Source: Euprymna scolopes
Lineage: Eukaryota
Reading direction: 5' to 3' (one strand)
Assembly: GCA_053919585.1 (NCBI GenBank)
Contig: CM132809.1
Length of the DNA stretch: 64,000 bases
Under the pieces are notes generated by a model. That model was not told the DNA's origin, did not search any database, and saw only the letters and a list, made by a program, of their open reading frames with translations. Shown here piece after piece: positions 26,981-64,000 of the stretch. Each line of letters starts with the position of its first letter. Position 1 is the stretch's first letter. Position numbers and translations under genes: made by a program.

Positions 26981-27900
26981 TTTTTTTACACAAGCATCAC
27001 CACATTATCAAGGCTAAGAGGCCACTCAAGGATTAGGGTTAAAGAGTGTACAGTAGAAATTAGACAATATAGTAATCATTAGTAATGAAAATTCGGTAAA
27101 TTTGATAACTTATATGGAACGGCTCATCAAGAACTTATTTACGTTAGACTTGAACACAACCATATTGTACTCAGCCGGAAAGCAGGAAAACGGAAGACAA
27201 TTCCACAGGCGTGCACTTCTAAGAAAGAAGCTTTGTTGATGGAATCTATGTTTAGGCACAGATAAAGAGTGAGGAGAATTATTGATGGTGTTTTCAGCTA
27301 GATGAGTGTTTCTTGTGAAAGTTTGGCGAGGGGGAATCGTAGACTGAAGCTCAGTCGAACACTTTCCATGAAAATAACGATATATCAGAGACAAACACGC
27401 AACATCTCTTCTGCGAGATAGAGGTTGAAGGGAAGAGAAAAGGACATCTCCTACGAGGCTACGAAGTCTATTTTGAACTCTATCAAGGCAGGATAAGTCC
27501 TTTCTAGCAGCTCCTGCCAAGATATGGCAACGGTATTCCATCCTTGGACGTACCTGGCTCTTATATAGATAGAGAATTGCATCAGCAGTTAGATATCTAC
27601 CAGATCGATAGAAAGATTCCACCATTTTTCCAGCGGCCTTGGCAACAGATTTGATGCACGTGTTCCATTTAAGATCAGGTGTAAAGGTCAAGCCCAGAAG
27701 CTTATAAAAACTTGAGGCCTCCTGAAGACGAGAGCCATTCATTTCAATTGATGCCAGATGTGGATTAGAATGTTGATGATGTAAAGAGAGAAGCTTGGTT
27801 TTAGATGCATTAAAAGTAACTAGCCACTCCTTTCCCCATTGTACTACGTGCTCAAGATCAGAGGAGAGAGAATCGGAGAGAACTTGGTCGTTTACAGTTT
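26981..27900 (-). mobile_element. 5'-truncated CR1/L2-type LINE (RT C-terminus plus 3' UTR)
   Basis: ORF 27110-27937 is highly similar to the 23928 copy and has the same 3' UTR and poly(A). Confidence 0.9.
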
Positions 27901-28289
27901 TAGATATTTTGCTAAAAAGTTGGATTAGTGATAGCAAACACTTTCTTTTGATAAAAGTTCGGGAGTTTTACGAGTTCTTAATTCTTTTCTTTGTTGCCAC
28001 AAATGATGGAGATACACAGACTGAGATAGATTTTATCAAGCCTTAATATCTGAAATCGTCTTATTTCTGTCCTTTATCTTGGGTGCTGCCATTTATTTTC
28101 ATTTATTCATATTATTCTATATAGGTATGATTAATAGCTGACCTTATAGTGAGCAGTATCCTCACTGCAGGTACCATCACCCTGTATATAAAGAAAGTAT
28201 GAAGGCATCCGAAGACGAGTTCCGCGATGTGGAGAAAGATTTTATTTATGAGAACTTTAATATTAACATGGTTCACATAATTATGGTTT

Positions 28290-30920
28290 TCACTTTGTAT
28301 GGTATTTCATATGTTTTGTTAGATCTTTTTTATGAAAACATGAATATACACATTTTTCACAAGAATATGGCCTTCCACTACTGTGAAATATCATATGCAT
28401 CTCTAGATGGTGTTTCTGCGAACATGAATATTCACATTGTTCACAAGAAAATGGCTTTTGTCCAGTGTGAGTCCTAATATGTAGCACTAGATGTGCTTTC
28501 TGCCGACATGAATAATCACATTGTTTACAAGAATATGGCTTTTCACCAGTGTTAGTACTCATATACGCTGCTAGATTTTGTTGCTCAGGACGTGGATATT
28601 GATATTGTTCACGAGAATATGGATTTTCTCCGGTGTCAGTACTCGTATGCATCGCGAGATTTGGTTTCTCAGGAGAGGAATATTCCAATTGTTCCAAAGA
28701 ATATGGTTTTCCTCCAGTGTGAGTACTCATATGTATCGCTAGATTTGGTTTCTCAAGACAGGAATACTCCAATTGTTCCAAGGAATATGACTTTTCCTCA
28801 GTGTGAGTACTCATATGCATCAGTAGATTTTGATCAGCAGAACGTGGATATTGACATTGTTCCTGAGAATATGGATTTTCTCCTGTGTGAGTACTCATAT
28901 GCATCGGTAGATTTGATTTCTCAGGACAGGAATACTCCAATTGTTCCAAGGAATATGATTTTTCCGCAGTGTTAGTACTCATATGCATCGGTCGATTTGA
29001 TTTCTCAGGACAGGAATACTCCAATTGTTCCAAGGAATATGATTTTTCCGCAGTGTTAGTACTCATATGCATCGGTAGATTTGATTTCTCAGGACAGGAA
29101 TACTCCAATTGTTCCAAGGAATATGATTTTTCCGCAGTGTTAGTACTCATATGCATCGGTAGATTTGATTTCTCAGGACAGGAATACTCCAATTGTTCCA
29201 AGGAATATGATTTTTCCGCAGTGGTACTACTCGAATGCATCGGTAGATTTGATTTCTCAGGACAGAAATACTCCAATTGTTCCAAGGAATGCTCCAATTC
29301 TTCCAAGGAATATGACTTTTCCGCAGTGTTAGTACTCATATGCATCGGTAGATTTGATTTCTCAGGACAGGAATACTCCAATTGTTCCAAGGAATATGAC
29401 TTTTCCGCAGTGTTACTACTCATATGCATCGGATGATTCGATTTCTCAGGACAGGAATACTCCAATTGTTCCAAGGAATATGACTTTTCCTCAGTGTTAC
29501 TACTCATATGCATCGGTAGATTTGATTTCTCAGGACAGGAATACTCCAATTGTTCCAAGGAATATGACTTTTCCTCAGTGTTACTACTCATATGCATCGG
29601 TAGATTTGATTTCTCAGGACAGAAATACTCCAATAGTTCCAAGGAATGCTCCAATTCTTCCAAGGAATATGACTTTTCCGCAGTGTTAGTACTCATATGC
29701 ATCGGTAGATTTGATTTCTCAGGACAGGAATACTCTAATTGTCCCAAGGAATATGACTTTTCCTCAGTGTTACTACTCATATGCATCGGTAGATTTGATT
29801 TCTCAGGACAGGAATACTCCAATTGTTCCAAGGAATATGACTTTTCCTCAGTGTTACTACTCATATGCATCGGTAGATTTGATTTCTCAGGACAGGAATA
29901 CTCCAATTGTTCCAAGGAATATGACTTTTCCTCAGTGTTACTACTCATAGGCATCGGTAGATTTGATTTCTCAGGAAAGAAATACTCCAATTGTTCCAAG
30001 GAATATGACTTTTCCGCAGTGTTAGTACTCATATGCATCGGTAGATTTGATTTCTCAGGACAGGAATACTCCAATTGTTCCAAGGAATATGACTTTTCCT
30101 CAGTATTACTACTCATATGCATCGGTAGATTTGATTTCTCAGGACAGGAATACTCCAATTGTTCCAAGGAATATGACTTTTCCGCAGTGTTACTACTCAT
30201 ATGCATCGATAGATTTGATTTCTCAGGACAGAAATACTCCAATTGTTCCAAGGAATGCTCCAATTCTTCCAAGGAATATGACTTTTCCTCAGTGTTAGTA
30301 CTCATATGCATCGGTAGATTTGATTTCTCAGGACAGGAATACTCCAATTGTTCCAAGGAATATGACTTTTCCGCAGTGTTAGTACTCATATGCATCGGTA
30401 GATTTGATTTCTCAGGACAGGAATACTCCAATTGTTCCAAGGAATATGACTTTTCCTCAGTGTTACTACTCATATGCATCGGTAGATTTGATTTCTCAGG
30501 ACAGGAATACTCCAATTGTTCCAAGGAATATGACTTTTCCTCAGTGTTACTACTCATATGCATCGATAGATTTGATTTCTCAGGACAGGAATACTCCAAT
30601 TGTTCCAAGGAATGCTCCAATTCTTCCAAGGAATATGACTTTTCCGCAGTGTTAGTACTCATATGCATCGGTAGATTTGATTTCTCAGGACAGGAATACT
30701 CCAATTGTTCCAAGGAATATGACTTTTCCTCAGTGTTACTACTCATATGCATCGATAGATTTGATTTCTCAGGACAGGAATACTCCAATTGTTCCAAGGA
30801 ATATGACTTTTCCTCAGTGTTACTACTCATATGCATCGATAGATTTGATTTCTCAGGACAGGAATACTCCAATTGTTCCAAGGAATATGACTTTTCCTCA
30901 GTGTTACTACTCATATGCAT
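28290..30920 (-). CDS. C2H2 zinc-finger protein 3' ORF: degenerate 28-aa repeats followed by three intact fingers (true start unknown; may be a pseudogene)
   Basis: The C-terminus has CKQCDYSCRQKAHLVLHIRTH, CEQCEYSCSQKHHLEMHMIFH and CEKCVYSCFHKKDLTKHMKYH with TGEKPY/TGQKPF/SGRPY linkers at 28293-28529. The frame is open to the first upstream stop at 30936. Confidence 0.55.
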   Translation of the reverse strand: MHMSSNTEEKSYSLEQLEYSCPEKSNLSMHMSSNTEEKSYSLEQLEYSCPEKSNLSMHMSSNTEEKSYSLEQLEYSCPEKSNLPMHMSTNTAEKSYSLEELEHSLEQLEYSCPEKSNLSMHMSSNTEEKSYSLEQLEYSCPEKSNLPMHMSSNTEEKSYSLEQLEYSCPEKSNLPMHMSTNTAEKSYSLEQLEYSCPEKSNLPMHMSTNTEEKSYSLEELEHSLEQLEYFCPEKSNLSMHMSSNTAEKSYSLEQLEYSCPEKSNLPMHMSSNTEEKSYSLEQLEYSCPEKSNLPMHMSTNTAEKSYSLEQLEYFFPEKSNLPMPMSSNTEEKSYSLEQLEYSCPEKSNLPMHMSSNTEEKSYSLEQLEYSCPEKSNLPMHMSSNTEEKSYSLGQLEYSCPEKSNLPMHMSTNTAEKSYSLEELEHSLELLEYFCPEKSNLPMHMSSNTEEKSYSLEQLEYSCPEKSNLPMHMSSNTEEKSYSLEQLEYSCPEKSNHPMHMSSNTAEKSYSLEQLEYSCPEKSNLPMHMSTNTAEKSYSLEELEHSLEQLEYFCPEKSNLPMHSSSTTAEKSYSLEQLEYSCPEKSNLPMHMSTNTAEKSYSLEQLEYSCPEKSNLPMHMSTNTAEKSYSLEQLEYSCPEKSNRPMHMSTNTAEKSYSLEQLEYSCPEKSNLPMHMSTHTGENPYSQEQCQYPRSADQNLLMHMSTHTEEKSYSLEQLEYSCLEKPNLAIHMSTHTGGKPYSLEQLEYSSPEKPNLAMHTSTDTGENPYSREQYQYPRPEQQNLAAYMSTNTGEKPYSCKQCDYSCRQKAHLVLHIRTHTGQKPFSCEQCEYSCSQKHHLEMHMIFHSSGRPYSCEKCVYSCFHKKDLTKHMKYHTK

Positions 30921-33900: not shown

Positions 33901-36900
33901 TCAGTGTTACTACTCATATGCATCGGTAGATTTGATTTCTCAGGAAAGAAATACTCCAATTGTTCCAAGGAATATGACTTTTCCTCAGTGTTACTACTCA
34001 TATGCATCGGTAGATTTTATTTCTCAGGACAGGAATACTCCAATTGTTCCAAGGAATATGACTTTTCCTCAGTGTTACTACTCATATGCATCGATAGATT
34101 TGATTTCTCAGGACAGGAATACTCCAATTGTTCCAAGGAATATGACTTTTCCTCAGTGTTACTACTCATATGCATCGATAGATTTGATTTCTCAGGACAG
34201 GAATACTCTAATTGTCCCAAGGAATATGACTTTTCCGCAGTGTTACTACTCATATGCATCGGTAGATTTGATTTCTCAGGATAGAAATACTCCAATTGTT
34301 CCAAGGAATATGACTTTTCCTCAGTGTTACTACTCATATGCATCGGTAGATTTGATTTCTCAGGAAAGAAATACTCCAATTGTTCCAAGGAATATGACTT
34401 TTCCTCAGTGTTACTACTCATATGCATCGGTAGATTTTATTTCTCAGGACAGGAATACTCCAATTGTTCCAAGGAATATGACTTTTCCTCAGTGTTACTA
34501 CTCATATGCATCGATAGATTTGATTTCTCAGGACAGGAATACTCCAATTGTTCCAAGGAATATGACTTTTCCTCAGTGTTACTACTCATATGCATCGATA
34601 GATTTGATTTCTCAGGACAGGAATACTCCAATTGTTCCAAGGAATATGACTTTTCCTCAGTGTTACTACTCATATGCATCGATAGATTTGATTTCTCAGG
34701 ACAGAAATACTCCAATTGTTCCAAGGAATGCTCCAATTCTTCCAAGGAATATGACTTTTCCTCAGTGTTAGTACTCATATGCATCGGTAGATTTGATTTC
34801 TCAGGACAGGAATACTCCAATTGTTCCAAGGAATATGACTTTTCCGCAGTGTTAGTACTCATATGCATCGGTAGATTTGATTTCTCAGGACAGGAATACT
34901 CCAATTGTTCCAAGGAATATGACTTTTCCTCAGTGTTACTACTCATATGCATCGATAGATTTGATTTCTCAGGACAGGAATACTCCAATTGTTCCAAGGA
35001 ATGCTCCAATTCTTCCAAGGAATATGACTTTTCCGCAGTGTTAGTACTCATATGCATCGGTAGATTTGATTTCTCAGGACAGGAATACTCCAATTGTTCC
35101 AAGGAATATGACTTTTCCTCAGTGTTACTACTCATATGCATCGGTAGATTTGATTTCTCAGGACAGAAATACTCCAATTGTTCCAAGGAATATGACTTTT
35201 CCTCAGTGTTACTACTCATATGCATCGATAGATTTGATTTCTCAGGACAGGAATACTCCAATTGTTCCAAGGAATGCTCCAATTCTTCCAAGGAATATGA
35301 CTTTTCCGCAGTGTTAGTACTCATATGCATCGGTAGATTTGATTTCTCAGGACAGAAATACTCCAATTGTTCCAAGGAATGCTCCAATTCTTCCAAGGAA
35401 TATGACTTTTCCGCAGTGTTAGTACTCATATGCATCGGTAGATTTGATTTCTCAGGACAGAAATACTCCAATTGTTCCAAGGAATATGACTTTTCCTCAG
35501 TGTTACTACTCATATGCATCGATAGATTTGATTTCTCAGGACAGGAATACTCCAATTGTTCCAAGGAATATGACTTTTCCTCAGTGTTACTACTCATATG
35601 CATCGATAGATTTGATTTCTCAGGACAGGAATACTCCAATTGTTCCAAGGAATATGACTTTTCCTCAGTGTTAGTACTCATATGCATCGATAGATTTTAT
35701 TTCTCAGGACAGGAATACTCCAATTGTTCCAAGGAATATGACTTTTCCTCAGTGTTACTACTCATATGCATCGATAGATTTGATTTCTCAGGACAGGAAT
35801 ACTCCAATTGTTCCAAGGAATGCTCCAATTCTTCCAAGGAATATGACTTTTCCTCAGTGTTAGTACTCATATGCATCGGTAGATTTGATTTCTCAGGACA
35901 GGAATACTCCAATTGTTCCAAGGAATATGACTTTTCCGCAGTGTTAGTACTCATATGCATCGGTAGATTTGATTTCTCAGGACAGGAATACTCCAATTGT
36001 TCCAAGGAATATGACTTTTCCTCAGTGTTACTACTCATATGCATCGGTAGATTTGATTTCTCAGAACAGGAATACTCAAATTGTTCCAAGGAATATGACT
36101 TTTCCTCAGTGTTACTACTCATATGCATCGATAGATTTGATTTCTCAGGACAGGAATACTCCAATTGTTCCAAGGAATGCTCCAATTCTTCCAAGGAATA
36201 TGACTTTTCCGCAGTGTTAGTACTCATATGCATCGGTAGATTTGATTTCTCAGGACAGGAATACTCCAATTGTTCCAAGGAATATGACTTTTCCTCAGTG
36301 TTACTACTCATATGCATCGATAGATTTGATTTCTCAGGACAGGAATACTCCAATTGTTCCAAGGAATATGACTTTTCCTCAGTGTTACTACTCATATGCA
36401 TCGATAGATTTGATTTCTCAGGACAGGAATACTCCAATTGTTCCAAGGAATATGACTTTTCCTCAGTGTTAGTACTCATATGCATCGATAGATTTGATTT
36501 CTCAGGACAGGAATACTCCAATTGTTCCAAGGAATATGACTTTTCCTCAGTGTTACTACTCATATGCATCGATAGATTTGATTTCTCAGGACAGGAATAC
36601 TCCAATTGTTCCAAGGAATATGACTTTTCCTCAGTGTTACTACTCATATGCATCGATAGATTTGATTTCTCAGGACAGGAATACTCCAATTGTTCCAAGG
36701 AATGCTCCAATTCTTCCAAGGAATATGACTTTTCCTCAGTGTTAGTACTCATATGCATCGGTAGATTTGATTTCTCAGGACAGGAATACTCCAATTGTTC
36801 CAAGGAATATGACTTTTCCTCAGTGTTACTACTCATATGCATCGGTAGATTTGATTTCTCAGGACAGGAATACTCCAATTGTTCCAAGGAATATGACTTT

Positions 36901-39900
36901 TCCTCAGTGTTACTACTCATAGGCATCGGTAGATTTGATTTCTCAGGACAGGAATACTCCAATTGTTCCAAGGAATATGACTTTTCCTCAGTGTTACTAC
37001 TCATAGGCATCGGTAGATTTGATTTCTCAGGACAGGAATACTCCAATTGTTCCAAGGAATATGACTTTTCCGCAGTGTTACTACTCATATGCATCGATAG
37101 ATTTGATTTCTCAGGACAGGAATACTCCAATTGTTCCAAGGAATGCTCCAATTCTTCCAAGGAATATGACTTTTCCTCAGTGTTAGTACTCATATGCATC
37201 GGTAGATTTGATTTCTCAGGACAGGAATACTCCAATTGTTCCAAGGAATATGACTTTTCCTCAGTATTACTACTCATATGCATCGATAGATTTGATTTCT
37301 CAGGACAGGAATACTCCAATTGTTCCAAGGAATGCTCCAATTCTTCCAAGGAATATGACTTTTCCGCAGTGTTACTACTCATATGCATCGATAGATTTGA
37401 TTTCTCAGGACAGAAATACTCCAATTGTTCCAAGGAATGCTCCAATTCTTCCAAGGAATATTACTTTTCCTCAGTGTTAGTACTCATATGCATCGGTAGA
37501 TTTGATTTCTCAGGACAGGAATACTCCAATTGTTCCAAGGAATATGACTTTTCCGCAGTGTTAGTACTCATATGCATCGGTAGATTTGATTTCTCAGGAC
37601 AGGAATACTCCAATTGTTCCAAGGAATATGACTTTTCCTCAGTGTTACTACTCATATGCATCGGTAGATTTCATTTCTCTGGACAGGAATACTCCAATTG
37701 TTCCAAGGAATATGACTTTTCCTCAGTGTTACTACTCATATGCATCGATAGATTTGATTTCTCAGGACAGGAATACTCCAATTGTTCCAAGGAATGCTCC
37801 AATTCTTCCAAGGAATATGACTTTTCCGCAGTGTTAGTACTCATATGCATCGGTAGATTTGATTTCTCAGGACAGGAATACTCCAATTGTTCCAAGGAAT
37901 ATGACTTTTCCTCAGTGTTACTACTCATATGCATCGATAGATTTGATTTCTCAGGACAGGAATACTCCAATTGTTCCAAGGAATGCTCCAATTCTTCCAA
38001 GGAATATGACTTTTCCTCAGTGTTAGTACTCATATGCATCGGTAGATTTGATTTCTCAGGACAGGAATACTCCAATTGTTCCAAGGAATATGACTTTTCC
38101 TTAGTATTACTACTCATATGCATCGATAGATTTGATTTCTCAGGACAGAAATACTCCAATTGTTCCAAGGAATATGACTTTTCCTCAGTGTTACTACTCA
38201 TATGCATCGATAGATTTGATTTCTCAGGACAGGAATACTCCAATTGTTCCAAGGAATATGACTTTTCCTCAGTGTTACTACTCATATGCATCGATAGATT
38301 TGATTTCTCAGGAAAGGAATACTCCAATTCTTCCAAGGAATATGACTTTTCCGCAGTGTTACTACTCATATGCATCGATAGAGTTGATTTCTCAGGACAG
38401 AAATACTCCAATTGTTCCAAGGAATGCTCCAATTCTTCCAAGGAATATGACTTTTCCTCAGTGTTAGTACTCATATGCATCGGTAGATTTGATTTCTCAG
38501 GACAGGAATACTCCAATTGTTCCAAGGAATATGACTTTTCCGCAGTGTTAGTACTCATATGCATCGGTAGATTTGATTTCTCAGGACAGGAATACTCCAA
38601 TTGTTCCAAGGAATATGACTTTTCCTCAGTGTTACTACTCATATGCATCGGTAGATTTGATTTCTCAGGACAGGAATACTCCAATTGTTCCAAGGAATAT
38701 GACTTTTCCTCAGTGTTACTACTCATATGCATCGATAGATTTTATTTCTCAGGACAGGAATACTCCAATTGTTCCAAGGAATGCTCCAATTCTTCCAAGG
38801 AATATGACTTTTCCTCAGTGTTAGTACTCATATGCATCGGTAGATTTGATTTCTCAGGACAGGAATACTCCAATTGTTCCAAGGAATATGACTTTTCCTT
38901 AGTATTACTACTCATATGCATCGATAGATTTGATTTCTCAGGACAGGAATACTCCAATTCTTCCAAGGAATATGACTTTTCCGCAGTGTTATTACTCATA
39001 TGCATCGATAGATTTGATTTCTCAGGACAGAAATACTCCAATTGTTCCAAGGAATGCTCCAATTCTTCCAATGAATATGACTTTTCCTCAGTGTAAGTAC
39101 TCATATGCATCGGTAGATTTGATTTCTCAGGACAGGAATACTCCAATTGTTCCAAGGAATATGACTTTTCCGCAGTGTTAGTACTCATATGCATCGGTAG
39201 ATTTGATTTCTCAGGACAGGAATACTCCAATTGTTCCAAGGAATATGACTTTTCCGCAGTGTTAGTACTCATATGCATCGATAGATTTGATTTCTCAGGA
39301 CAGAAATACTCCAATTGTTCCAAGGAATATGACTTTTCCTCAGTATTACTACTCATATGCATCGGTAGATTTGATTTCTCAGGACAGGAATACTCCAATT
39401 GTTCCAAGGAATATGACTTTTCCTCGGTGTTACTACTCATATGCATCGATAGATTTGATTTCTCAGGACAGGAATACTCCAATTCTTCCAAGGAATATGA
39501 CTTTTCCGCAGTGTTACTACTCATATGCATCGATTGATTTGATTTCTCAGGACAGAAATACTCCAATTGTTCCAAGGAATGCTCCAATTCTTCCAAGGAA
39601 TATGACTTTTCCTCAGTGTTAGTACTCATATGCATCGGTAGATTTGATTTCTCAGGACAGGAATACTCCAATTGTTCCAAGGAATATGACTTTTCCGCAG
39701 TGTTAGTACTCATATGCATCGGTAGATTTGATTTCTCAGGACAGGAATACTCCAATTGTTCCAAGGAATATGACTTTTCCTCAGTGTTACTACTCATATG
39801 CATCGGTAGATTTGATTTCTCAGGACAGGAATACTCCAATTGTTCCAAGGAATATGACTTTTCCTCAGTGTTACTACTCATATGCATCGATAGATTTGAT

Positions 39901-42900
39901 TTCTCAGGACAAGAATACTCCAATTGTTCCAAGGAATGCTCCAATTCTTCCAAGGAATATGACTTTTCCTCAGTGTTAGTACTCATATGCATCGGTAGAT
40001 TTGATTTCTCAGGACAGAAATACTCCAATTGTTCCAAGGAATATGACTTTTCCTTAGTATTACTACTCGTATGCATCGATAGATTTGATTTCTCAGGACA
40101 GGAATACTCCAATTCTTCCAAGGAATATGACTTTTCCGCAGTGTTACTACTCATATGCATCGATAGATTTGATTTCTCAGGACAGAAATACTCCAATTGT
40201 TCCAAGGAATGCTCCAATTCTTCCAAGGAATATGACTTTTCCTCAGTGTTAGTACTCATATGCATCGGTAGATTTGATTTCTCAGGACAGGAATACTCCA
40301 ATTGTTCCAAGGAATAAGACTTTTCCGCAGTGTTAGTACTCATATGCATCGGTAGATTTGATTTCTCAGGACAGGAATACTCCAATTGTTCCAAGGAATA
40401 TGACTTTTCCTCAGTGTTACTACTCATATGCATCGGTAGATTTGATTTCTCAGGACAGGAATACTCCAATTGTTCCAAGGAATATGACTTTTCCTCAGTG
40501 TTACTACTCATATGCATCGATAGATTTGATTTCTCAGGACAGGAATACTCCAATTGTTCCAAGGAATGCTCCAATTCTTCCAAGGAATATGACTTTTCCT
40601 CAGTGTTAGTACTCATATGCATCGGTAGATTTGATTTCTCAGGACAGGAATACTCCAATTGTTCCAAGGAATATGACTTTTCCGCAGTGTTAGTACTCAT
40701 ATGCATCGGTAGATTTGATTTCTCAGGACAGGAATACTCCAATTGTTCCAAGGAATATGACTTTTCCTCAGTGTTACTACTCATATGCATCGGTAGATTT
40801 GATTTCTCAGAACAGGAATACTCAAATTGTTCCAAGGAATATGACTTTTCCTCAGTGTTACTACTCATATGCATCGATAGATTTGATTTCTCAGGACAGG
40901 AATACTCCAATTGTTCCAAGGAATGCTCCAATTCTTCCAAGGAATATGACTTTTCCGCAGTGTTAGTACTCATATGCATCGGTAGATTTGATTTCTCAGG
41001 ACAGGAATACTCCAATTGTTCCAAGGAATATGACTTTTCCTCAGTGTTACTACTCATATGCATCGATAGATTTGATTTCTCAGGACAGGAATACTCCAAT
41101 TGTTCCAAGGAATATGACTTTTCCTCAGTGTTACTACTCATATGCATCGATAGATTTGATTTCTCAGGACAGGAATACTCCAATTGTTCCAAGGAATATG
41201 ACTTTTCCTCAGTGTTAGTACTCATATGCATCGATAGATTTGATTTCTCAGGACAGGAATACTCCAATTGTTCCAAGGAATATGACTTTTCCTCAGTGTT
41301 ACTACTCATATGCATCGATAGATTTGATTTCTCAGGACAGGAATACTCCAATTGTTCCAAGGAATATGACTTTTCCTCAGTGTTACTACTCATATGCATC
41401 GATAGATTTGATTTCTCAGGACAGGAATACTCCAATTGTTCCAAGGAATGCTCCAATTCTTCCAAGGAATATGACTTTTCCTCAGTGTTAGTACTCATAT
41501 GCATCGGTAGATTTGATTTCTCAGGACAGGAATACTCCAATTGTTCCAAGGAATATGACTTTTCCTCAGTGTTACTACTCATATGCATCGGTAGATTTGA
41601 TTTCTCAGGACAGGAATACTCCAATTGTTCCAAGGAATATGACTTTTCCTCAGTGTTACTACTCATAGGCATCGGTAGATTTGATTTCTCAGGACAGGAA
41701 TACTCCAATTGTTCCAAGGAATATGACTTTTCCTCAGTGTTACTACTCATAGGCATCGGTAGATTTGATTTCTCAGGACAGGAATACTCCAATTGTTCCA
41801 AGGAATATGACTTTTCCGCAGTGTTACTACTCATATGCATCGATAGATTTGATTTCTCAGGACAGGAATACTCCAATTGTTCCAAGGAATGCTCCAATTC
41901 TTCCAAGGAATATGACTTTTCCTCAGTGTTAGTACTCATATGCATCGGTAGATTTGATTTCTCAGGACAGGAATACTCCAATTGTTCCAAGGAATATGAC
42001 TTTTCCTCAGTATTACTACTCATATGCATCGATAGATTTGATTTCTCAGGACAGGAATACTCCAATTGTTCCAAGGAATGCTCCAATTCTTCCAAGGAAT
42101 ATGACTTTTCCGCAGTGTTACTACTCATATGCATCGATAGATTTGATTTCTCAGGACAGAAATACTCCAATTGTTCCAAGGAATGCTCCAATTCTTCCAA
42201 GGAATATTACTTTTCCTCAGTGTTAGTACTCATATGCATCGGTAGATTTGATTTCTCAGGACAGGAATACTCCAATTGTTCCAAGGAATATGACTTTTCC
42301 GCAGTGTTAGTACTCATATGCATCGGTAGATTTGATTTCTCAGGACAGGAATACTCCAATTGTTCCAAGGAATATGACTTTTCCTCAGTGTTACTACTCA
42401 TATGCATCGGTAGATTTCATTTCTCTGGACAGGAATACTCCAATTGTTCCAAGGAATATGACTTTTCCTCAGTGTTACTACTCATATGCATCGATAGATT
42501 TGATTTCTCAGGACAGGAATACTCCAATTGTTCCAAGGAATGCTCCAATTCTTCCAAGGAATATGACTTTTCCGCAGTGTTAGTACTCATATGCATCGGT
42601 AGATTTGATTTCTCAGGACAGGAATACTCCAATTGTTCCAAGGAATATGACTTTTCCTCAGTGTTACTACTCATATGCATCGATAGATTTGATTTCTCAG
42701 GACAGGAATACTCCAATTGTTCCAAGGAATGCTCCAATTCTTCCAAGGAATATGACTTTTCCTCAGTGTTAGTACTCATATGCATCGGTAGATTTGATTT
42801 CTCAGGACAGGAATACTCCAATTGTTCCAAGGAATATGACTTTTCCTTAGTATTACTACTCATATGCATCGATAGATTTGATTTCTCAGGACAGAAATAC

Positions 42901-45900
42901 TCCAATTGTTCCAAGGAATATGACTTTTCCTCAGTGTTACTACTCATATGCATCGATAGATTTGATTTCTCAGGACAGGAATACTCCAATTGTTCCAAGG
43001 AATATGACTTTTCCTCAGTGTTACTACTCATATGCATCGATAGATTTGATTTCTCAGGAAAGGAATACTCCAATTCTTCCAAGGAATATGACTTTTCCGC
43101 AGTGTTACTACTCATATGCATCGATAGAGTTGATTTCTCAGGACAGAAATACTCCAATTGTTCCAAGGAATGCTCCAATTCTTCCAAGGAATATGACTTT
43201 TCCTCAGTGTTAGTACTCATATGCATCGGTAGATTTGATTTCTCAGGACAGGAATACTCCAATTGTTCCAAGGAATATGACTTTTCCGCAGTGTTAGTAC
43301 TCATATGCATCGGTAGATTTGATTTCTCAGGACAGGAATACTCCAATTGTTCCAAGGAATATGACTTTTCCTCAGTGTTACTACTCATATGCATCGGTAG
43401 ATTTGATTTCTCAGGACAGGAATACTCCAATTGTTCCAAGGAATATGACTTTTCCTCAGTGTTACTACTCATATGCATCGATAGATTTTATTTCTCAGGA
43501 CAGGAATACTCCAATTGTTCCAAGGAATGCTCCAATTCTTCCAAGGAATATGACTTTTCCTCAGTGTTAGTACTCATATGCATCGGTAGATTTGATTTCT
43601 CAGGACAGGAATACTCCAATTGTTCCAAGGAATATGACTTTTCCTTAGTATTACTACTCATATGCATCGATAGATTTGATTTCTCAGGACAGGAATACTC
43701 CAATTCTTCCAAGGAATATGACTTTTCCGCAGTGTTATTACTCATATGCATCGATAGATTTGATTTCTCAGGACAGAAATACTCCAATTGTTCCAAGGAA
43801 TGCTCCAATTCTTCCAATGAATATGACTTTTCCTCAGTGTAAGTACTCATATGCATCGGTAGATTTGATTTCTCAGGACAGGAATACTCCAATTGTTCCA
43901 AGGAATATGACTTTTCCGCAGTGTTAGTACTCATATGCATCGGTAGATTTGATTTCTCAGGACAGGAATACTCCAATTGTTCCAAGGAATATGACTTTTC
44001 CGCAGTGTTAGTACTCATATGCATCGATAGATTTGATTTCTCAGGACAGAAATACTCCAATTGTTCCAAGGAATATGACTTTTCCTCAGTATTACTACTC
44101 ATATGCATCGGTAGATTTGATTTCTCAGGACAGGAATACTCCAATTGTTCCAAGGAATATGACTTTTCCTCGGTGTTACTACTCATATGCATCGATAGAT
44201 TTGATTTCTCAGGACAGGAATACTCCAATTCTTCCAAGGAATATGACTTTTCCGCAGTGTTACTACTCATATGCATCGATTGATTTGATTTCTCAGGACA
44301 GAAATACTCCAATTGTTCCAAGGAATGCTCCAATTCTTCCAAGGAATATGACTTTTCCTCAGTGTTAGTACTCATATGCATCGGTAGATTTGATTTCTCA
44401 GGACAGGAATACTCCAATTGTTCCAAGGAATATGACTTTTCCGCAGTGTTAGTACTCATATGCATCGGTAGATTTGATTTCTCAGGACAGGAATACTCCA
44501 ATTGTTCCAAGGAATATGACTTTTCCTCAGTGTTACTACTCATATGCATCGGTAGATTTGATTTCTCAGGACAGGAATACTCCAATTGTTCCAAGGAATA
44601 TGACTTTTCCTCAGTGTTACTACTCATATGCATCGATAGATTTGATTTCTCAGGACAAGAATACTCCAATTGTTCCAAGGAATGCTCCAATTCTTCCAAG
44701 GAATATGACTTTTCCTCAGTGTTAGTACTCATATGCATCGGTAGATTTGATTTCTCAGGACAGAAATACTCCAATTGTTCCAAGGAATATGACTTTTCCT
44801 TAGTATTACTACTCGTATGCATCGATAGATTTGATTTCTCAGGACAGGAATACTCCAATTCTTCCAAGGAATATGACTTTTCCGCAGTGTTACTACTCAT
44901 ATGCATCGATAGATTTGATTTCTCAGGACAGAAATACTCCAATTGTTCCAAGGAATGCTCCAATTCTTCCAAGGAATATGACTTTTCCTCAGTGTTAGTA
45001 CTCATATGCATCGGTAGATTTGATTTCTCAGGACAGGAATACTCCAATTGTTCCAAGGAATAAGACTTTTCCGCAGTGTTAGTACTCATATGCATCGGTA
45101 GATTTGATTTCTCAGGACAGGAATACTCCAATTGTTCCAAGGAATATGACTTTTCCTCAGTGTTACTACTCATATGCATCGGTAGATTTGATTTCTCAGG
45201 ACAGGAATACTCCAATTGTTCCAAGGAATATGACTTTTCCTCAGTGTTACTACTCATATGCATCGATAGATTTGATTTCTCAGGACAGGAATACTCCAAT
45301 TGTTCCAAGGAATGCTCCAATTCTTCCAAGGAATATGACTTTTCCGCAGTGTTAGTACTCATATGCATCGGTAGATTTGATTTCTAAGGACAGAAATACT
45401 CCAATTGTTCCAAGGAATATGACTTTTCCTCAGTGTTACTACTCATAGGCATCGATAGATTTGATTTCTCAGGACAGGAATACTCCAATTGTTCCAAGGA
45501 ATATGACTTTTCCTCAGTGTTACTACTCATATGCATCGGTAGATTTGATTTCTCAGGACAGGAATACTCCAATTGTTCCAAGGAATATGACTTTTCCTCA
45601 GTGTTACTACTCATATGCATCGGTAGATTTGATTTCTCAGGACAGGAATACTCCAATTGTTCCAAGGAATATGACTTTTCCTCAGTGTTACTACTCATAT
45701 GCATCGGTAGATTTGATTTCTCAGGACAGGAATACTCCAATTGTTCCAAGGAATATGACTTTTCCTCAGTGTTAGTACTCATAGGCATCGGTAGATTTGA
45801 TTTCTCAGGACAGGTATACTCCAATTGTTCCAAGGAATATGACTTTTCCTCAGTGTTACTACTCATATGCATCGGTAGATTTGATTTCTCAGGACAGGAA

Positions 45901-48900
45901 TACTCCAATTGTTCCAAGGAATATGACTTTTCCTCAGTGTTACTACTCATATGCATCGGTAGATTTGATTTCTCAGGACAGGTATACTCCAATTGTTCCA
46001 AGGAATATGACTTTTCCTCAGTGTTACTACTCATATGCATCGGTAGATTTGATTTCTCAGGACAGGAATACTCCAATTGTTCCAAGGAATATGACTTTTC
46101 CTCAGTGTTACTACTCATATGCATCGGTAGATTTGATTTCTCAGGACAGGAATACTCCAATTGTTCCAAGGAATATGACTTTTCCTCAGTGTTACTACTC
46201 ATATGCATCGGTAGATTTGATTTCTCAGGACAGGTATACTCCAATTGCTCCAAGGAATATGACTTTTCCTCAGTGTTACTACTCATATGCATCGGTAGAT
46301 TTGATTCTCAGGACAGGTATACTCCAATTGTTCCAAGGAATATGACTTTTCCTCAGTGTTACTACTCATATGCATCGGTAGATTTGATTTCTCAGGACAG
46401 GAATACTCCAATTGTTCCAAGGAATATGATTTTTCCGCAATGTTAGTACTCATATGCATCGGTAGATTTGATTTCTCAGGACAGGAATACTCCAATTGTT
46501 CCAAGGAATATGATTTTTCCGCAGTGGTACTACTCGAATGCATCGGTAGATTTGATTTCTCAGGACAGAAATACTCCAATTGTTCCAAGGAATGCTCCAA
46601 TTCTTCCAAGGAATATGACTTTTCCGCAGTGTTAGTACTCATATGCATCGGTAGATTTGATTTCTCAGGACAGGAATACTCCAATTGTTCCAAGGAATAT
46701 GACTTTTCCGCAGTGTTACTACTCATATGCATCGGTAGATTCGATTTCTCAGGACAGGAATACTCCAATTGTTCCAAGGAATATGACTTTTCCTCAGTGT
46801 TACTACTCATATGCATCGGAAGATTTGATTTCTCAGGACAGGAATACTCCAATTGTTCCAAGGAATATGACTTTTCCTCAGTGTTACTACTCATATGCAT
46901 CGGTAGATTTGATTTCTCAGGACAGAAATACTCCAATAGTTCCAAGGAATGCTCCAATTCTTCCAAGGAATATGACTTTTCCGCAGTGTTAGTACTCATA
47001 TGCATCGGTAGATTTGATTTCTCAGGACAGGAATACTCTAATTGTCCCAAGGAATATGACTTTTCCTCAGTGTTACTACTCATATGCATCGGTAGATTTG
47101 ATTTCTCAGGACAGGAATACTCCAATTGTTCCAAGGAATATGACTTTTCCTCAGTGTTACTACTCATATGCATCGGTAGATTTGATTTCTCAGGACAGGA
47201 ATACTCCAATTGTTCCAAGGAATATGACTTTTCCTCAGTGTTACTACTCATAGGCATCGGTAGATTTGATTTCTCAGGACAGGAATACTCCAATGTTTCC
47301 AAGGAATGCTCCAATTCTTCCAAGGAATATGACTTTTCCTCAGTGTTAGTACTCATATGCATCGGTAGATTTGATTTCTCAGGACAGGAATACTCTAATT
47401 GTTCCAAGGAATATGACTTTTCCTCAGTGTTACTACTCATATGCATCGGTAGATTTGATTTCTCAGGACAGGAATACTCTAATTGTCCCAAGGAATATGA
47501 CTTTTCCTCAGTGTTACTACTCATATGCATCGGTAGATTTGATTTCCCAGGACAGGAATACTCCAATTGTTCCAAGGAATATGACTTTTCCTCAGTGTTA
47601 CTACTCATAGGCATCGGTAGATTTGATTTCTCAGGAAAGAAATACTCCAATTGTTCCAAGGAATATGACTTTTCCTCAGTGTTAGTACTCATATGCATCG
47701 GTAGATTTGATTTCTCAGGAAAGGAATACTCCAATTGTTCCAAGGAATATGACTTTTCCTCAGTATTACTACTCATATGCATCGGTAGATTTGATTTCTC
47801 AGGACAGGAATACTCCAATTGTTCCAAGGAATATTACTTTTCCGCAGTGTTACTACTCATATGCATCGATAGATTTGATTTCTCAGGACAGAAATACTCC
47901 AATTGTTCCAAGGAATGCTCCAATTCTTCCAAGGAATATGACTTTTCCTCAGTGTTAGTACTCATATGCATCGGTAGATTTGATTTCTCAGGACAGGAAT
48001 ACTCCTATTGTTCCAAGGAATATGACTTTTCCGCAGTGTTAGTACTCATATGCATCGGAAGATTTGATTTCTCAGGACAGGAATACTCCAATTGTTCCAA
48101 GGAATATGACTTTTCCTCAGTGTTACTACTCATATGCATCGGTAGATTTGATTTCTCAGGACAGGAATACTCCAATTGTTCCAAGGAATATGACTTTTCC
48201 TCAGTGTTACTACTCATATGCATCGATAGATTTGATTTCTCAGGACAGGAATACTCCAATTGTTCCAAGGAATGCTCCAATTCTTCCAAGGAATATGACT
48301 TTTCCGCAGTGTTTGTACTCATATGCATCGGTAGATTTGATTTCTCAGGACAGGAATACTCCAATTGTTCCAAGGAATATGACTTTTCCTCAGTGTTACT
48401 ACTCATATGCATCGATAGATTTGATTTCTCAGGACAGGAATACTCCAATTGTTCCAAGGAATATGACTTTTCCTCAGTGTTACTACTCATATGCATCGAT
48501 AGATTTGATTTCTCAGGACAGGAATACTCCAATTGTTCCAAGGAATATGACTTTTCCTCAGTGTTACTACTCTTATGCATCGATAGATTTGATTTCTAAG
48601 GACAGGAATACTCCAATTGTTCCAAGGAATATGACTTTTCCTCAGTGTTACTACTCATATGCATCGATAGATTTGATTTCTCAGGACAGGAATACTCCAA
48701 TTGTTCCAAGGAATATGACTTTTCCTCAGTGTTACTACTCATATGCATCGATAGATTTGATTTCTCAGGACAGAAATACTCCAATTGTTCCAAGGAATAT
48801 GACTTTTCCTCAGTGTTACTACTCATATGCATCGATAGATTTGATTTCTCAGGACAGGAATACTCCAATTGTTCCAAAGAATGCTTCAATTCTTCCAAGG

Positions 48901-51900: not shown

Positions 51901-54900
51901 TGTTAGTACTCATATGCATCGGTAGATTTGATTTCTCAGGACAGGAATACTCCAATTGTTCCAAGGAATATGACTTTTCCGCAGTGTTAGTACTCATATG
52001 CATCGGTAGATTTGATTTCTCAGGACAGGAATACTCCAATTGTTCCAAGGAATATGACTTTTCCTCAGTGTTACTACTCATATGCATCGGTAGATTTGAT
52101 TTCTCAGGACAGGAATACTCCAATTGTTCCAAGGAATATGACTTTTCCTCAGTGTTACTACTCATATGCATCGATAGATTTGATTTCTCAGGACAGGAAT
52201 ACTCCAATTGTTCCAAGGAATGCTCCAATTCTTCCAAGGAATATGACTTTTCCGCAGTGTTAGTACTCATATGCATCGGTAGATTTGATTTCTCAGGACA
52301 GGAATACTCCAATTGTTCCAAGGAATATGACTTTTCCTCAGTGTTAGTACTCATATGCATCGATAGATTTGATTTCTCAGGACAGGAATACTCCAATTGT
52401 TCCAAGGAATATGACTTTTCCGCAGTGTTACTACTCATATGCATCGATAGATTTGATTACTCAGGACAGGAATACTCACATTGTTCCAAGGAATGCTCCA
52501 ATTCTTCCAAGAAATATGACTTTTCCTCAGTGTTAGTACTCATATGCATCGGTAGATTTGATTTCTCAGGACAGGAATACTCCAATTGTTCCAAGGAATA
52601 TGACTTTTCCTCAGTATTACTACTCATATGCATCGATAGATTTGATTTCTCAGGACAGGAATACTCCAATTGTTCCAAGGAATGCTCCAATTCTTCCAAG
52701 GAATATGACTTTTCTGCAGTGTTACTACTCATATGCATCGATAGATTTGATTTCTCAGGACAGAAATACTCCAATTGTTCCAAGGAATGCTCCAATTCTT
52801 CCAAGGAATATGACTTTTCCTCAGTGTTAGTACTCATATGCATCGGTAGATTTGATTTCTCAGGACAGGAATACTCCAATTGTTCCAAGGAATATGACTT
52901 TTCCGCAGTGTTAGTACTCATATGCATCGGTAGATTTGATTTCTCAGGACAGGAATACTCCAATTGTTCCAAGGAATATGACTTTTCCTCAGTGTTACTA
53001 CTCATATGCATCGGTAGATTTGATTTCTCAGGACAGGAATACTCCAATTGTTCCAAGGAATATGACTTTTCCTCAGTGTTACTACTCATATGCATCGAAA
53101 GATTTGATTTCTCAGGACAGGAATACTCCAATTGTTCCAAGGAATGCTCCAATTCTTCCAAGGAATATGACTTTTCCGCAGTGTTAGTACTCATATGCAT
53201 CGGTAGATTTGATTTCTCAGGACAGGAATACTCCAATTGTTCCAAGGAATATGACTTTTCCTCAGTGTTACTACTCATATGCATCGATAGATTTGATTTC
53301 TCAGGACAGGAATACTCCAATTGTTCCAAGGAATGCTCCAATTCTTCCAAGGAATATGACTTTTCCTCAGTGTTAGTACTCATATGCATCGGTAGATTTG
53401 ATTTCTCAGGACAGGAATACTCCAATTGTTCCAAGGAATATGACTTTTCCTTAGTATTACTACTCATATGCATCGATAGATTTGATTTCTCAGGACAGAA
53501 ATACTCCAATTGTTCCAAGGAATATGACTTTTCCTCAGTGTTACTACTCATATGCATCGATAGATTTGATTTCTCAGGACAGGAATACTCCAATTGTTCC
53601 AAGGAATATGACTTTTCCTCAGTGTTACTACTCATATGCATCGATAGATTTGATTTCTCAGGACAGGAATACTCCAATTCTTCCAAGGAATATGACTTTT
53701 CCGCAGTGTTACTACTCATATGCATCGATAGATTTGATTTCTCAGGACAGAAATACTCCAATTGTTCCAAGGAAGGCTCCAATTCTTCCAAGGAATATGA
53801 CTTTTCCTCAGTGTTAGTACTCATATGCATGGGTAGATTTGATTTCTCAGGACAGGAATACTCCAATTGTTCCAAGGAATATGACTTTTCCGCAGTGTTA
53901 GTACTCATATGCATCGGTAGATTTGTATTTCTCAGGACAGGAATACTCCAATTGTTCCAAGGAATATGACTTTTCCTCAGTGTTACTACTCATATGCATC
54001 GGTAGATTTGATTTCTCAGGACAGGAATACTCCAATTGTTCCAAGGAATATGACTTTTCCTCAGTGTTACTACTCATATGCATCGATAGATTTGATTTCT
54101 CAGGACAGGAATACTCCAATTGTTCCAAGGAATGCTCCAATTCTTCCAAGGAATATGACTTTTCCTCAGTGTTAGTACTCATATGCATCGGTAGATTTGA
54201 TTTCTCAGGACAGGAATACTCCAATTGTTCCAAGGAATATGACTTTTCCTTAGTATTACTACTCATATGCATCGATAGATTTGATTTCTCAGGACAGGAA
54301 TACTCCAATTCTTCCAAGGAATATGACTTTTCCGCAGTGTTACTACTCATATGCATCGATAGATTTGATTTCTCAGGACAGAAATACTCCAATTGTTCCA
54401 AGGAATGCTCCAATTCTTCCAAGGAATATGACTTTTCCTCAGTGTTAGTACTCATATGCATCGGTAGATTTGATTTCTCAGGACAGGAATACTCCAATTG
54501 TTCCAAGGAATATGACTTTTCCGCAGTGTTAGTACTCATATGCATCAGTAGATTTGATTTCTCAGGACAGGAATACTCCAATTGTTCCAAGGAATATGAC
54601 TTTTCCGCAGTGTTAGTACTCATATGCATCGATAGATTTGATTTCTCAGGACAGAAATACTCCAATTGTTCCAAGGAATATGACTTTTCCTCAGTATTAC
54701 TACTCATATGCATCGGTAGATTTGATTTCTCAGGACAGGAATACTCCAATTGTTCCAAGGAATATGACTTTTCCTCAGTGTTACTACTCATATGCATCGA
54801 TAGATTTGATTTCTCAGGACAGGAATACTCGAATTCTTCCAAGGAATATGACTTTTCCGCAGTGTTACTACTCATATGCATCGATAGATTTGATTTCTTA

Positions 54901-60900: not shown

Positions 60901-63900
60901 TTTTTCTCAGTGTTACTACTCATATGCATCGATAGATTTTATTTCTCAGGACAGGAATACTCCAATTGTTCCAAGGAATATGACTTTTCCTCAGTGTTAC
61001 TACTCATATGCATCGGTAGATTTGATTTCTCAGGACAGGAATACTCCAATTGTTCCAAGGAATATGACTTTTCCTCAGTGTTACTACTCATATGCATCGG
61101 TAGATTTGATTTCTCAGGACAGGAATACTCCAATTGTTCCAAGGAATATGACTTTTCCTCAGTGTTACTACTCATATGCATCGGTAGATTTGATTTCTCA
61201 GGAAAGAAATACTCCAATTGTTCCAAGGAATATGACTTTTCCTCAGTGTTAGTACTCATATGCATCGGTAGATTTGATTTCTCAGGACAGGAATACTCCA
61301 ATTGTTCCAAGGAATATGACTTTTCCTCAGTGTTACTACTCATATGCATCGATAGATTTGATTTCTCAGGAAAGAAATACTCCAATTGTTCCAAGGAATA
61401 TGACTTTTCCTCAGTGTTAGTACTCATATGCATCGGTAGATTTGATTTCTCAGGAAAGAAATACTCCAATTGTTCCAAGGAATATGACTTTTCCTCAGTG
61501 TTACTACTCATATGCATCGGTAGATTTGATTTCTCAGAAAAGAAATACTCCAATTGTTCCAAGGAATATGACTTTTCCTCAGTGTTACTACTCATATGCA
61601 TCGATAGATTTGATTTCTCAGGAAAGAAATACTCCAATTGTTCCAAGGAATATGACTTTTCCTCAGTATTAGTACTCATATGCATCGGTAGATTTGATTT
61701 CTCAGGAAAGAAATACTCCAATTGTTCCAAGGAATATGACTTTTCCTCAGTGTTACTACTCATATGCATCGGTAGATTTGATTTCTCAGGAAAGAAATAC
61801 TCCAATTGTTCCAAGGAATATGACTTTTCCTCAGTGTTACTACTCATATGCATCGGTAGATTTGATTTCTCAGGAAAGAAATACTCCAATTGTTCCAAGG
61901 AATATGACTTTTCCTCAGTGTTACTACTCATATGCATCGGTAGATTTGATTTCTCAGGAAAGAAATACTCCAATTGTTCCAAGGAATATGACTTTTCCTC
62001 AGTGTTACTACTCATATGCATCGATAGATTTGATTTCTCAGGACAGGAATACTCCAATTGTTCCAAGGAATATGACTTTTCCTCAGTGTTACTACTCATA
62101 TGCATCGGTAGATTTGATTTCTCAGTAAAGAAATACTCCAATTGTTCCAAGGAATATGACTTTTCCTCAGTGTTACTACTCATATGCATCGATAGATTTG
62201 ATTTCTCAGGACAGGAATACTCCAATTGTTCCAAGGAATATGACTTTTCCTCAGTGTTACTACTCATATGCATCGGTAGATTTTATTTCTCATGACAGGA
62301 ATACTCCAATTGTTCCAAGGAATATGACTTTTCCTCAGTGTTACTACTCATATGCATCGATAGATTTGATTTCTCAGGACAGGAATACTCCAATTGTTCC
62401 AAGGAATATGACTTTTCCTCAGTGTTACTACTCATATGCATCGGTAGATTTGATTTCTCAGGAAAGAAATACTCCAATTGTTCCAAGGAATATGACTTTT
62501 CCTCAGTGTTACTACTCATATGCATCGATAGATTTGATTTCTCAGGACAGGAATACTCCAATTGTTCCAAGGAATATGACTTTTCCTCAGTGTTACTACT
62601 CATATGCATCGGTAGATTTGATTTCTCAGGAAAGAAATACTCCAATTGTTCCAAGGAATATGACTTTTCCTCAGTGTTACTACTCATATGCATCGATAGA
62701 TTTGATTTCTCAGGACAGGAATACTCCAATTGTTCCAAGGAATATGACTTTTCCTCAGTGTTACTACTCATATGCATCGGTAGATTTGATTTCTCAGGAC
62801 AGGAATACTCCAATTGTTCCAAGGAATATGACTTTTCCTCAGTGTTACTACTCATATGCATCGATAGATTTGATTTCTCAGGACAGGAATACTCCAATTG
62901 TTCAAAGGAATATGACTTTTCCTCAGTGTTACTACTCATATGCATCGGTAGATTTGATTTCTCAGGACAGGTATACTCCAATTGTTCCAAGGAATATGAC
63001 TTTTCCTCAGTGTTACTACTCATATGCATCGATAGATTTGATTTCTCAGGACAGGTATACTCCAATTGTTTCAAGGAATATGACTTTTCCTCAGTGTTAG
63101 TACTCATATGCATCGGTAGATTTGATTTCTCAGGACAGGAATACTCCAATTGTTCCAAGGAATATGACTTTTCCTCAGTGTTACTACTCATATGCATCGA
63201 TAGATTTGATTTCACAGGACAGAAATACTCCAATTGTTCCAAGGAATATAACTTTTCCTCAGTGTTACTACTCATATGCATCGGTAGATTTGATTTCTCA
63301 GGACAGGAATACTCCCATTGTTCCAAGGAATATGACTTTTCCTCAGTGTTACTACTCATATGCATCGATAGATTTGATTTCTCAGGACAGGTATACTCCA
63401 ATTGTTCCAAGGAATATGACTTTTCCTCAGTGTTACTACTCATATGCATCGGTAGATTTGATTTCTCAGGACAGGAATACTCCAATTGTTCCAAGGAATA
63501 TGACTTTTCCTCAGTGTTACTACTCATATGCATCGATAGATTTGATTTCTCAGGACAGGTATACTCCAATTGTTCCAAGGAATATGACTTTTCCTCAGTA
63601 TTACTACTCATATGCATCGGTAGATTTGATTTCTCAGGACAGGAATACTCCAATTGTTCCAAGGAATATGACTTTTCCTCAGTGTTACTACTCATATGCA
63701 TCGGTAGATTTGATTTCTCAGGACAGGTATACTCCAATTGTTCCAAGGAATATGACTTTTCCTCAGTGTTACTACTCATATGCATCGATAGATTTGATTT
63801 CTCAGGACAGGTATACTCCAATTGTTCCAAGGAATATGACTTTTCCTCAGTGTTACTACTCATATGCATCGGTAGATTTGATTTCTCAGGACAGGAATAC

Positions 63901-64000
63901 TCCAATTGTTCCAAGGAATATGACTTTTCCGCAGTGTTAGTACTTATATGCATCGGTAGATTTGATTTCTCAGGACAGGAATACTCCAATTGTTCCAAGG
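28890..64000 (-). repeat. Giant tandem array (over 35 kb, roughly 390-400 units by estimate) of an 84-bp/105-bp unit derived from a C2H2 zinc-finger repeat; continues beyond the window
   Basis: Plus-strand unit CTCATATGCATCG(G/A)TAGATTTGATTTCTCAGGACAGGAATACTCCAATTGTTCCAAGGAATATGACTTTTCC(T/G)CAGTGTTA(C/G)TA. The minus frame reads YSLEQLEYSCPEKSNL(S/P)MHMS(S/T)NT(E/A)EKS. The 105-bp variant adds 21 bp (EELEHSL). Confidence 0.97.

What the first reader, a model, noticed from the sequence alone, without database searches (positions are those of the whole stretch)
28290..64000. Satellite DNA born from a C2H2 zinc-finger exon, still attached to its parent fingers
Seen: an 84-bp unit repeated for over 35 kb. 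On the minus strand it aligns residue for residue to the intact fingers at the array end (YSLEQLEYSCPEKSNLSMHMSSNTEEKS versus FSCEQCEYSCSQKHHLEMHMIFHSSGRP). Both Cys ligands became Leu (TGT to TTG), the last His became Asn, and the TGEKP linker became TEEKS/TAEKS. Established: tandem C2H2 fingers are 28 aa / 84 bp and can evolve as minisatellites (e.g. PRDM9), but such arrays normally contain tens of fingers at most and keep their zinc ligands. Inference: one zinc-dead finger underwent runaway amplification into a satellite-scale array, giving a directly visible gene-to-satellite transition. The array may now act as DNA (heterochromatin or centromere-like block, or a small-RNA source against related ZNF genes) rather than as protein.
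Basis: partly seen in the sequence, partly recalled or inferred. Interest (0 to 1): 0.92.

Follow-up and report, generated by a model that had tools for sequence, protein, structure and literature searches.

The report
Satellite DNA grown from a dead zinc finger
A tandem DNA array of at least 35 kb in a mollusc genome is built from one 84-bp zinc-finger coding unit that lost its zinc-binding residues, and it is still joined, in frame, to three intact-looking fingers, so the step from gene piece to non-coding satellite can be read directly.

Summary
From about 28.9 kb to the window end lie about 400 head-to-tail units: 312 of 84 bp, 85 of 105 bp (84 plus a 21-bp internal duplication) and two off by one base. 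There are no insertions, and mean pairwise identity is 96%.

On the minus strand the array runs in register through five decayed fingers (28536-28955) into three fingers with full C2H2 ligand sets (28293-28535) and a stop codon (28290). The consensus monomer matches the intact fingers at 55/84 and 59/84 bases in register (z = 12-14 against shuffles). Its translation still hits more than 5,000 C2H2 proteins.

The array is not coding. 26 of 395 units carry in-frame stops, both small indels shift the frame, the variant spectrum fits neutrality, and three of six frames of the consensus are open anyway. PolyA RNA is close to zero over the satellite.

Independent runs reproduce the flank, the fingers and the array edge. 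Nested duplications that have diverged (99.5% and about 98.8%) argue against an assembly artefact, but total length could not be measured.

Any role in chromatin or small RNA is untested. The scan's own unchecked notes report the same array continuing in the next window, and another ZNF-born satellite elsewhere in this genome.

The parts
28290..28292 (-). Stop codon that ends the zinc-finger reading frame
   Evidence: ORF 28290..30920 on the minus strand; translation
28293..28535 (-). Three fingers with complete C-x2-C-x12-H-x3-H ligand sets (28293-28367, 28368-28451, 28452-28535)
   Evidence: They are the only minus-strand matches to the C2H2 ligand pattern in six frames of the window; one + strand match at 23344-23409 looks like chance. 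Pfam zf-C2H2_16 / zf-C2H2 / zf-H2C2_2 best stretches fall at residues 796-834 of the ORF, which is this segment
28536..28955 (-). Five decayed fingers of two alternating kinds. Identity to the satellite consensus rises from 61/84 to 77/84
   Evidence: Unit-by-unit translation and identities; TRF period 168 here
28956..64000 (.). Homogenised satellite of 84-bp and 105-bp units. It runs off the window end
   Evidence: 395 analysable units, 117 distinct sequences, mean pairwise identity 96.0% with no dependence on distance
35456..45676 (.). Tandem duplication inside the array with a 4,746-bp shift (5,475 bp compared, 30 mismatches)
   Evidence: The same call shows older duplications at shifts of 16-17.7 kb with about 98.7-98.8% identity
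46305..46307 (.). One-base deletion in a T run (83-bp unit). It shifts the finger frame
   Evidence: stops in the finger frame become dense from 46308
53926..53926 (.). One-base insertion (85-bp unit). It restores the finger frame

Best explanation
This is a young satellite DNA that arose in place inside the tandem finger exon of a C2H2 zinc-finger gene (minus strand). Shown: the exon's 3' end survives as three intact-looking fingers plus a stop codon. Upstream of them the fingers lose their ligands step by step. One dead finger type then repeats about 400 times in this window. Inferred: the 84-bp periodicity of the finger array gave a substrate for out-of-register exchange or replication slippage. 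Once the gene was no longer under selection, one ligand-less unit, and a 105-bp derivative made by a 21-bp slip at a TATTCCT microhomology, was amplified. The array then grew by nested segmental duplications (189-bp dimers, a 4.7-kb block, 16-18-kb blocks) and was homogenised by exchange and conversion. Homogenisation reaches the array edge less often, which left the graded fossil series at 28.5-29.0 kb. The array now behaves as non-coding, largely silent DNA. Whether it has a chromatin role is unknown.
For: Array anatomy. In-register homology to the adjacent fingers, z = 12-14. Graded edge and codon changes. Four pure satellite units (112 aa) hit 5,106 proteins at E<=0.001, with the best-scoring stretches spanning nearly the whole 112-aa query (the query was not cut in finger register) and identity at most 40%; those of these hits that also carry a name are C2H2 zinc-finger proteins. 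The whole ORF scores 143 bits on Pfam zf-C2H2_16 although only one stretch passes alone. Non-coding behaviour: 26 of 395 units have in-frame stops from at least 10 different mutations. Both small indels are frameshifts. Distinct variants are 53 non-synonymous, 18 synonymous and 6 stop, which fits neutral expectation (p = 0.44-0.74), and third codon positions are the least variable. Three of six frames of the consensus are open, so long ORFs on both strands carry no weight. Transcription: polyA RNA depth is 0-0.5 over 28946-29600. Reads over the fingers carry paralogue letters (28553: 144 of 145 reads; 28354: 32 of 35). Independent support: exact contigs over the flank, the fingers and the edge junction 29237-29330 in three runs from two studies of organism A and in a DNA run of organism B. 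The satellite edge contig is deeper than the single-copy neighbours (249 vs 83-122 in X6; 69.7 vs 5-8 in X8). Diverged nested duplications.
Against: The far edge and the total length lie outside the window, and I could not check them. Copy number could not be measured, because the read tool skips multiply fitting records and no raw DNA reads were available. In-place birth is inferred from the gradient alone. Gene conversion spreading from a satellite that arrived from another ZNF locus could give a similar gradient. Small-RNA and non-polyA RNA were not examined.
Confidence: 0.8

Rival explanations
1. The array is part of a real giant coding exon that makes a zinc-free, finger-like repeat protein ending in three working fingers.
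For: The finger frame is open for 876 aa next to the intact fingers and for up to 1,152 aa further in. All but two units are multiples of 3 bp long.
Against: There are 13 in-frame stops in the first 18 kb, and 26 of 395 units carry stops. The only two small indels are frameshifts. The variant spectrum is neutral. Two plus-strand frames are equally open, with ORFs up to 1,774 aa. PolyA RNA over the satellite is about zero. No protein above 50% identity exists among 1.8 billion cluster representatives or in the word-indexed search.
Confidence: 0.03
2. The length is an assembly artefact: a short finger-derived minisatellite of a few kb was over-expanded by the assembler.
For: Total length could not be verified here. 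Summed contig depth over the satellite is modest.
Against: There are 117 distinct monomer sequences in an irregular 84/105 order. The internal duplications have diverged (30 mismatches in 5,475 bp; about 1.2% at the 16-18-kb shifts), rather than being identical loops. Satellite contigs are deeper than single-copy neighbours in independent runs. The depth tool leaves out multiply fitting records, so low depth proves nothing.
Confidence: 0.07
3. The monomer is finger-derived but was born at another ZNF locus. It arrived here by duplication and has been converting the neighbouring fingers, so these are not its parent fingers.
For: The genome holds many paralogous fingers: high depth over 28.3-28.9 kb at 90-95% identity. 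A second decayed ZNF end of the same subfamily lies at 23409-23660. A scan note reports another ZNF-born satellite elsewhere (unchecked).
Against: Register, strand and reading frame run continuously from the stop codon into the array. Identity to the consensus rises broadly from the intact fingers to the array edge across eight units, dipping at the second kind of dead finger. There is no breakpoint or foreign junction at the edge.
Confidence: 0.1

Closest known systems
Coding zinc-finger minisatellites (PRDM9 and other tandem C2H2 arrays)
   Same: An 84-bp / 28-aa unit arranged head to tail, with copy number changed by unequal exchange.
   Different: Those arrays hold about 10-40 fingers, keep all four ligands and an open frame, and vary at DNA-contact residues. 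Here there are about 400 or more units with no Cys ligands, plus stops, frameshifts and a neutral variant spectrum.
Classical satellite DNA seeded by a pre-existing repeat (rDNA spacer- or transposon-derived satellites; review PMC5615363)
   Same: A long, homogeneous, uninterrupted tandem array that is non-coding, with higher-order and nested duplications and more divergent units at the array edge.
   Different: The seed is an exon of a host protein-coding gene family, not a transposon or rDNA spacer. The review lists rDNA spacers and transposons as seeds and does not mention host exons.
70-90-bp tandem repeat enriched beside octopus C2H2 genes (Albertin et al. 2015, Nature 524:220). Recalled from memory; the paper is not held in the library
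   Same: A period in the 70-90-bp range next to C2H2 fingers in what is probably an octopod genome.
   Different: As I recall it, that report compares the repeat with human beta-satellite linkage and does not derive it from the fingers. Here the derivation is shown base by base. Identity of the two repeats was not tested.
Stellate / Su(Ste) arrays of Drosophila (own knowledge)
   Same: Tandem arrays derived from a protein-coding gene that became a non-coding repeat.
   Different: Those units are kb-sized whole-gene copies with a shown piRNA role. Here the unit is one 84-bp domain module and no small-RNA evidence exists.

Membership tests
C2H2 zinc finger (Pfam PF00096 / PF23611) | Cys-x2-4-Cys-x12-His-x3-5-His ligand set | tested here: met
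   Met by the three fingers at 28293-28535 only.
C2H2 zinc finger (Pfam PF00096 / PF23611) | The same ligand set in the satellite monomer | tested here: not met
   The monomer has Leu, Leu, His, Asn at the four ligand positions. No match to the ligand pattern occurs anywhere in 28536-64000.
Satellite DNA | Long head-to-tail array of near-identical monomers (tens of kb or more) | tested here: met
   At least 35 kb in the window, about 400 units, 96% mean identity, no interruptions. Total length was not verified.
Satellite DNA | Non-coding evolution | tested here: met
   Stops in 26 of 395 units, frameshifts, and a neutral split of synonymous, non-synonymous and stop variants.
Satellite DNA | Heterochromatic or centromeric location and packaging | not testable with these tools
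   No chromatin or cytogenetic data are available. The neighbours are transposon fragments and a second dead ZNF end.
Coding ZNF minisatellite (PRDM9-like) | Intact frame and ligands across the repeats, with variation focused on contact residues | tested here: not met
Octopus C2H2-associated 70-90-bp tandem repeat (Albertin 2015, from memory) | A 70-90-bp period flanking a C2H2 gene in an octopus genome | tested here: inconclusive
   The period (84 bp) and the adjacency are met. The organism is only inferred to be a mollusc or octopod, from run labels and scan note s1-241390. The paper could not be read.

The most novel reading that the evidence does not exclude
Zinc-finger exons may be a recurrent nursery of satellites in this (probably cephalopod) genome. 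On this reading, the tandem repeats long known to flank its expanded C2H2 genes are dead-finger arrays like this one. Decaying ZNF clusters would then seed large blocks of repeat DNA that shape chromosome architecture and perhaps silence or recombine with live paralogues.
Probability: 0.3. Interest if true: 0.7.

Novelty: new variant of a known kind. Interest (0 to 1): 0.55.

Why it matters
How satellites are born is usually inferred after the seed has vanished. Here the seed (intact fingers), the intermediates (five progressively decayed fingers) and the product (a homogenised array of at least 35 kb) lie in one continuous reading frame. The order of events can therefore be read from the sequence: ligand loss first, then amplification, then nested duplication. 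It also shows that a host protein-coding exon, and not only a transposon or an rDNA spacer, can seed a satellite. It offers a simple explanation to test for the reported association of short tandem repeats with expanded ZNF families.

Tried and rejected
1. Two protein-database searches with the ORF and with its finger end gave only generic C2H2 proteins at 48% identity or less.
2. A third search with a Gypsy integrase fragment gave unnamed environmental hits only, so the species stays unidentified.
3. Albertin et al. 2015 is not held in the library. Seven literature searches found no paper that describes a ZNF-derived satellite.
4. An exact 42-mer of the monomer has no match in the metagenome contig collection.
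5. Rfam gives nothing in the window.
It leaves out multiply fitting records, so copy number and array length could not be estimated.
7. A BLAST self-comparison of the array timed out and was replaced by a shift scan.
8. ORF length as evidence of coding was rejected, because three of six frames of the consensus are open.

Full report
OBSERVATION. Tandem Repeats Finder reports period-84 arrays, with 105, 168, 189 and 273 composites, from 28237 to the window end. I anchored every unit on a 14-mer. The spacings are 312 of 84 bp, 85 of 105 bp, one of 83 bp (unit near 46281) and one of 85 bp (near 53903). Nothing else is inserted in 35 kb. The 105-bp unit is the 84-bp unit with its first 21 bp duplicated. 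The duplicated segment and the next one both start with TATTCCT, a microhomology that fits a slippage origin. Across 395 analysable units there are 117 distinct sequences. Mean pairwise identity is 96.0% and does not fall with distance.

LINK TO THE FINGERS. On the minus strand a stop codon lies at 28290-28292. It is preceded by three fingers with complete C-x2-C-x12-H-x3-H ligand sets (28293-28535). These are the only minus-strand matches to that pattern in six frames of the window; one plus-strand match at 23344-23409 looks like chance. Pfam places its individually significant C2H2 stretches there.

Upstream, in the same register, come five decayed fingers (28536-28955). They are of two alternating kinds, and their identity to the satellite consensus is 61, 70, 73, 64 and 77 of 84. 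From 28956 the units are homogenised at 80/84 and above. The consensus monomer matches the two full intact fingers at 55/84 and 59/84 bases without gaps. The true register is the best of all 84 rotations. Shuffled monomers reach 32.5 ± 1.9 at their best rotation (maximum 43 in 5,000), so z = 12-14.

Independently of the neighbouring fingers, four pure satellite units (112 aa) hit 5,106 proteins at E <= 0.001. The best-scoring stretches span nearly the whole 112-aa query (the query was not cut in finger register), identity never exceeds 40%, and those of these hits that also carry a name are C2H2 zinc-finger proteins. The 876-aa ORF scores 143 bits on zf-C2H2_16 through many weak repeats. The monomer is therefore a finger derivative beyond reasonable doubt.

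CODING OR NOT. The finger frame has 13 stops between 28290 and 46300. 26 of 395 units carry in-frame stops that arise from at least ten different mutations. The only two small indels are single-base changes that break and later restore the frame.

Among the 84-bp units, the distinct variants split into 53 non-synonymous, 18 synonymous and 6 stop. This fits the neutral expectation from all possible changes (p = 0.44) and from a 2:1 transition bias (p = 0.74). Third codon positions are the least variable, not the most. Three of the six frames of the consensus are open, which explains the ORFs of up to 1,774 aa on the plus strand as well. No protein above 50% identity to the repeat exists among the cluster representatives or in the word-indexed search. 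The array evolves as non-coding DNA.

READ EVIDENCE. Two polyA RNA-seq runs of the same species label give depth 0-0.5 over 28946-29600. Over the fingers they give stranded coverage consistent with minus-strand RNA. Almost all of those reads carry paralogue letters (28553: 144 of 145; 28354: 32 of 35), so this locus itself is barely expressed.

Contigs from three runs of organism A (two studies) and from a DNA run labelled organism B match exactly over the flank (27920-28265), the fingers (28347-28599) and the array-edge junction (29237-29330). The edge contig is deeper than single-copy neighbours: 249 against 83-122 in X6, and 69.7 against 5-8 in X8. Satellite 31-mers occur in at least 17 runs.

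The tool warns that these depths are not copy numbers, and it skips records that fit several places. It refuses stretches with more than 12 copies. Total length therefore remains unverified.

Three features argue against an assembler loop. The order of 84-bp and 105-bp units is irregular. The 4,746-bp duplication has 30 mismatches in 5,475 bp. The 16-17.7-kb duplications are only about 98.7-98.8% identical.

CONTEXT. Run labels point to a mollusc. An earlier follow-up in the same genome saw octopus homologues (unchecked). Next to the stop codon lies a very high-copy LINE reverse-transcriptase fragment with polyA-tailed transcripts. A second ZNF 3' end of the same subfamily, with all of its fingers ligand-defective, lies at 23409-23660. 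A degraded Gypsy element lies at 17.8-20.8 kb. The locus looks like a decaying ZNF cluster.

Unchecked scan notes say the array continues for more than 50 kb in the next window. They also say it ends, about 48.8 kb past this window, at another in-frame ZNF pseudogene, and that another ZNF-born satellite exists elsewhere in the genome. If so, the array is about 84 kb long and is an internal expansion of one finger exon.

MECHANISM. Shown: homology, register, the edge gradient, non-coding evolution and nested duplications. Inferred: unequal sister-chromatid or homologue exchange and slippage, helped by the pre-existing 84-bp periodicity, amplified one ligand-less unit after selection on the gene had lapsed. 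Later block duplications and conversion homogenised the interior, while the edge escaped and kept the intermediates. A present role in heterochromatin, at a centromere or in small-RNA production is possible but untested.

COMPARISON AND NOVELTY. The array works like a classical satellite and fails every test for a coding ZNF minisatellite. A review of satellite origins lists rDNA spacers and transposons as seeds, not host exons. My searches found no description of a ZNF-derived satellite. From memory, the octopus genome paper reported a 70-90-bp tandem repeat enriched beside C2H2 genes without deriving it from fingers, but I could not read it.

I rate this a new variant of a known kind. It is a clean and instructive case that standard repeat dynamics explain.

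Noticed in passing
window 23409-23660 (minus strand): A second zinc-finger 3' end of the same subfamily (53-68 of 84 bases identical to the fingers at 28.3-28.9 kb). It has its own stop codon, and every finger lacks at least one ligand, so it looks like a neighbouring ZNF pseudogene remnant.
   Followed up: partly
window 26894-27937 and 24500-24841: An extremely high-copy repeat (summed contig depth in the millions). Its 275-aa minus-strand ORF resembles the C-terminal part of LINE reverse transcriptases. RNA reads end in polyA at about 26981-27005. Some contigs join 24.7 kb directly to 27.4-27.8 kb, so the two blocks belong to one element family.
   Followed up: partly
window 19639-19666: (GGTTAG) x 4.7, a telomere-type hexamer run. 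It lies inside a minus-strand ORF with an integrase core domain (19202-19963) of a degraded Gypsy-like element.
   Followed up: no
window 11650-12948; 21774-22292; 5835-6125: Other tandem arrays unrelated to the finger satellite: 40 bp x 32 (95% matches), 46 bp x 11 (97%) and 70 bp x 4 (98%).
   Followed up: no
window 13242-13391: A run of 150 N (assembly gap), flanked by AG/AT/CT microsatellites at 13.4-15.8 kb.
   Followed up: no
window 28262-28945: PolyA RNA reads over the finger part are strongly stranded (first mate on +, so probably minus-strand RNA). They come almost entirely from paralogues, which shows that related ZNF genes of this subfamily are expressed.
   Followed up: partly
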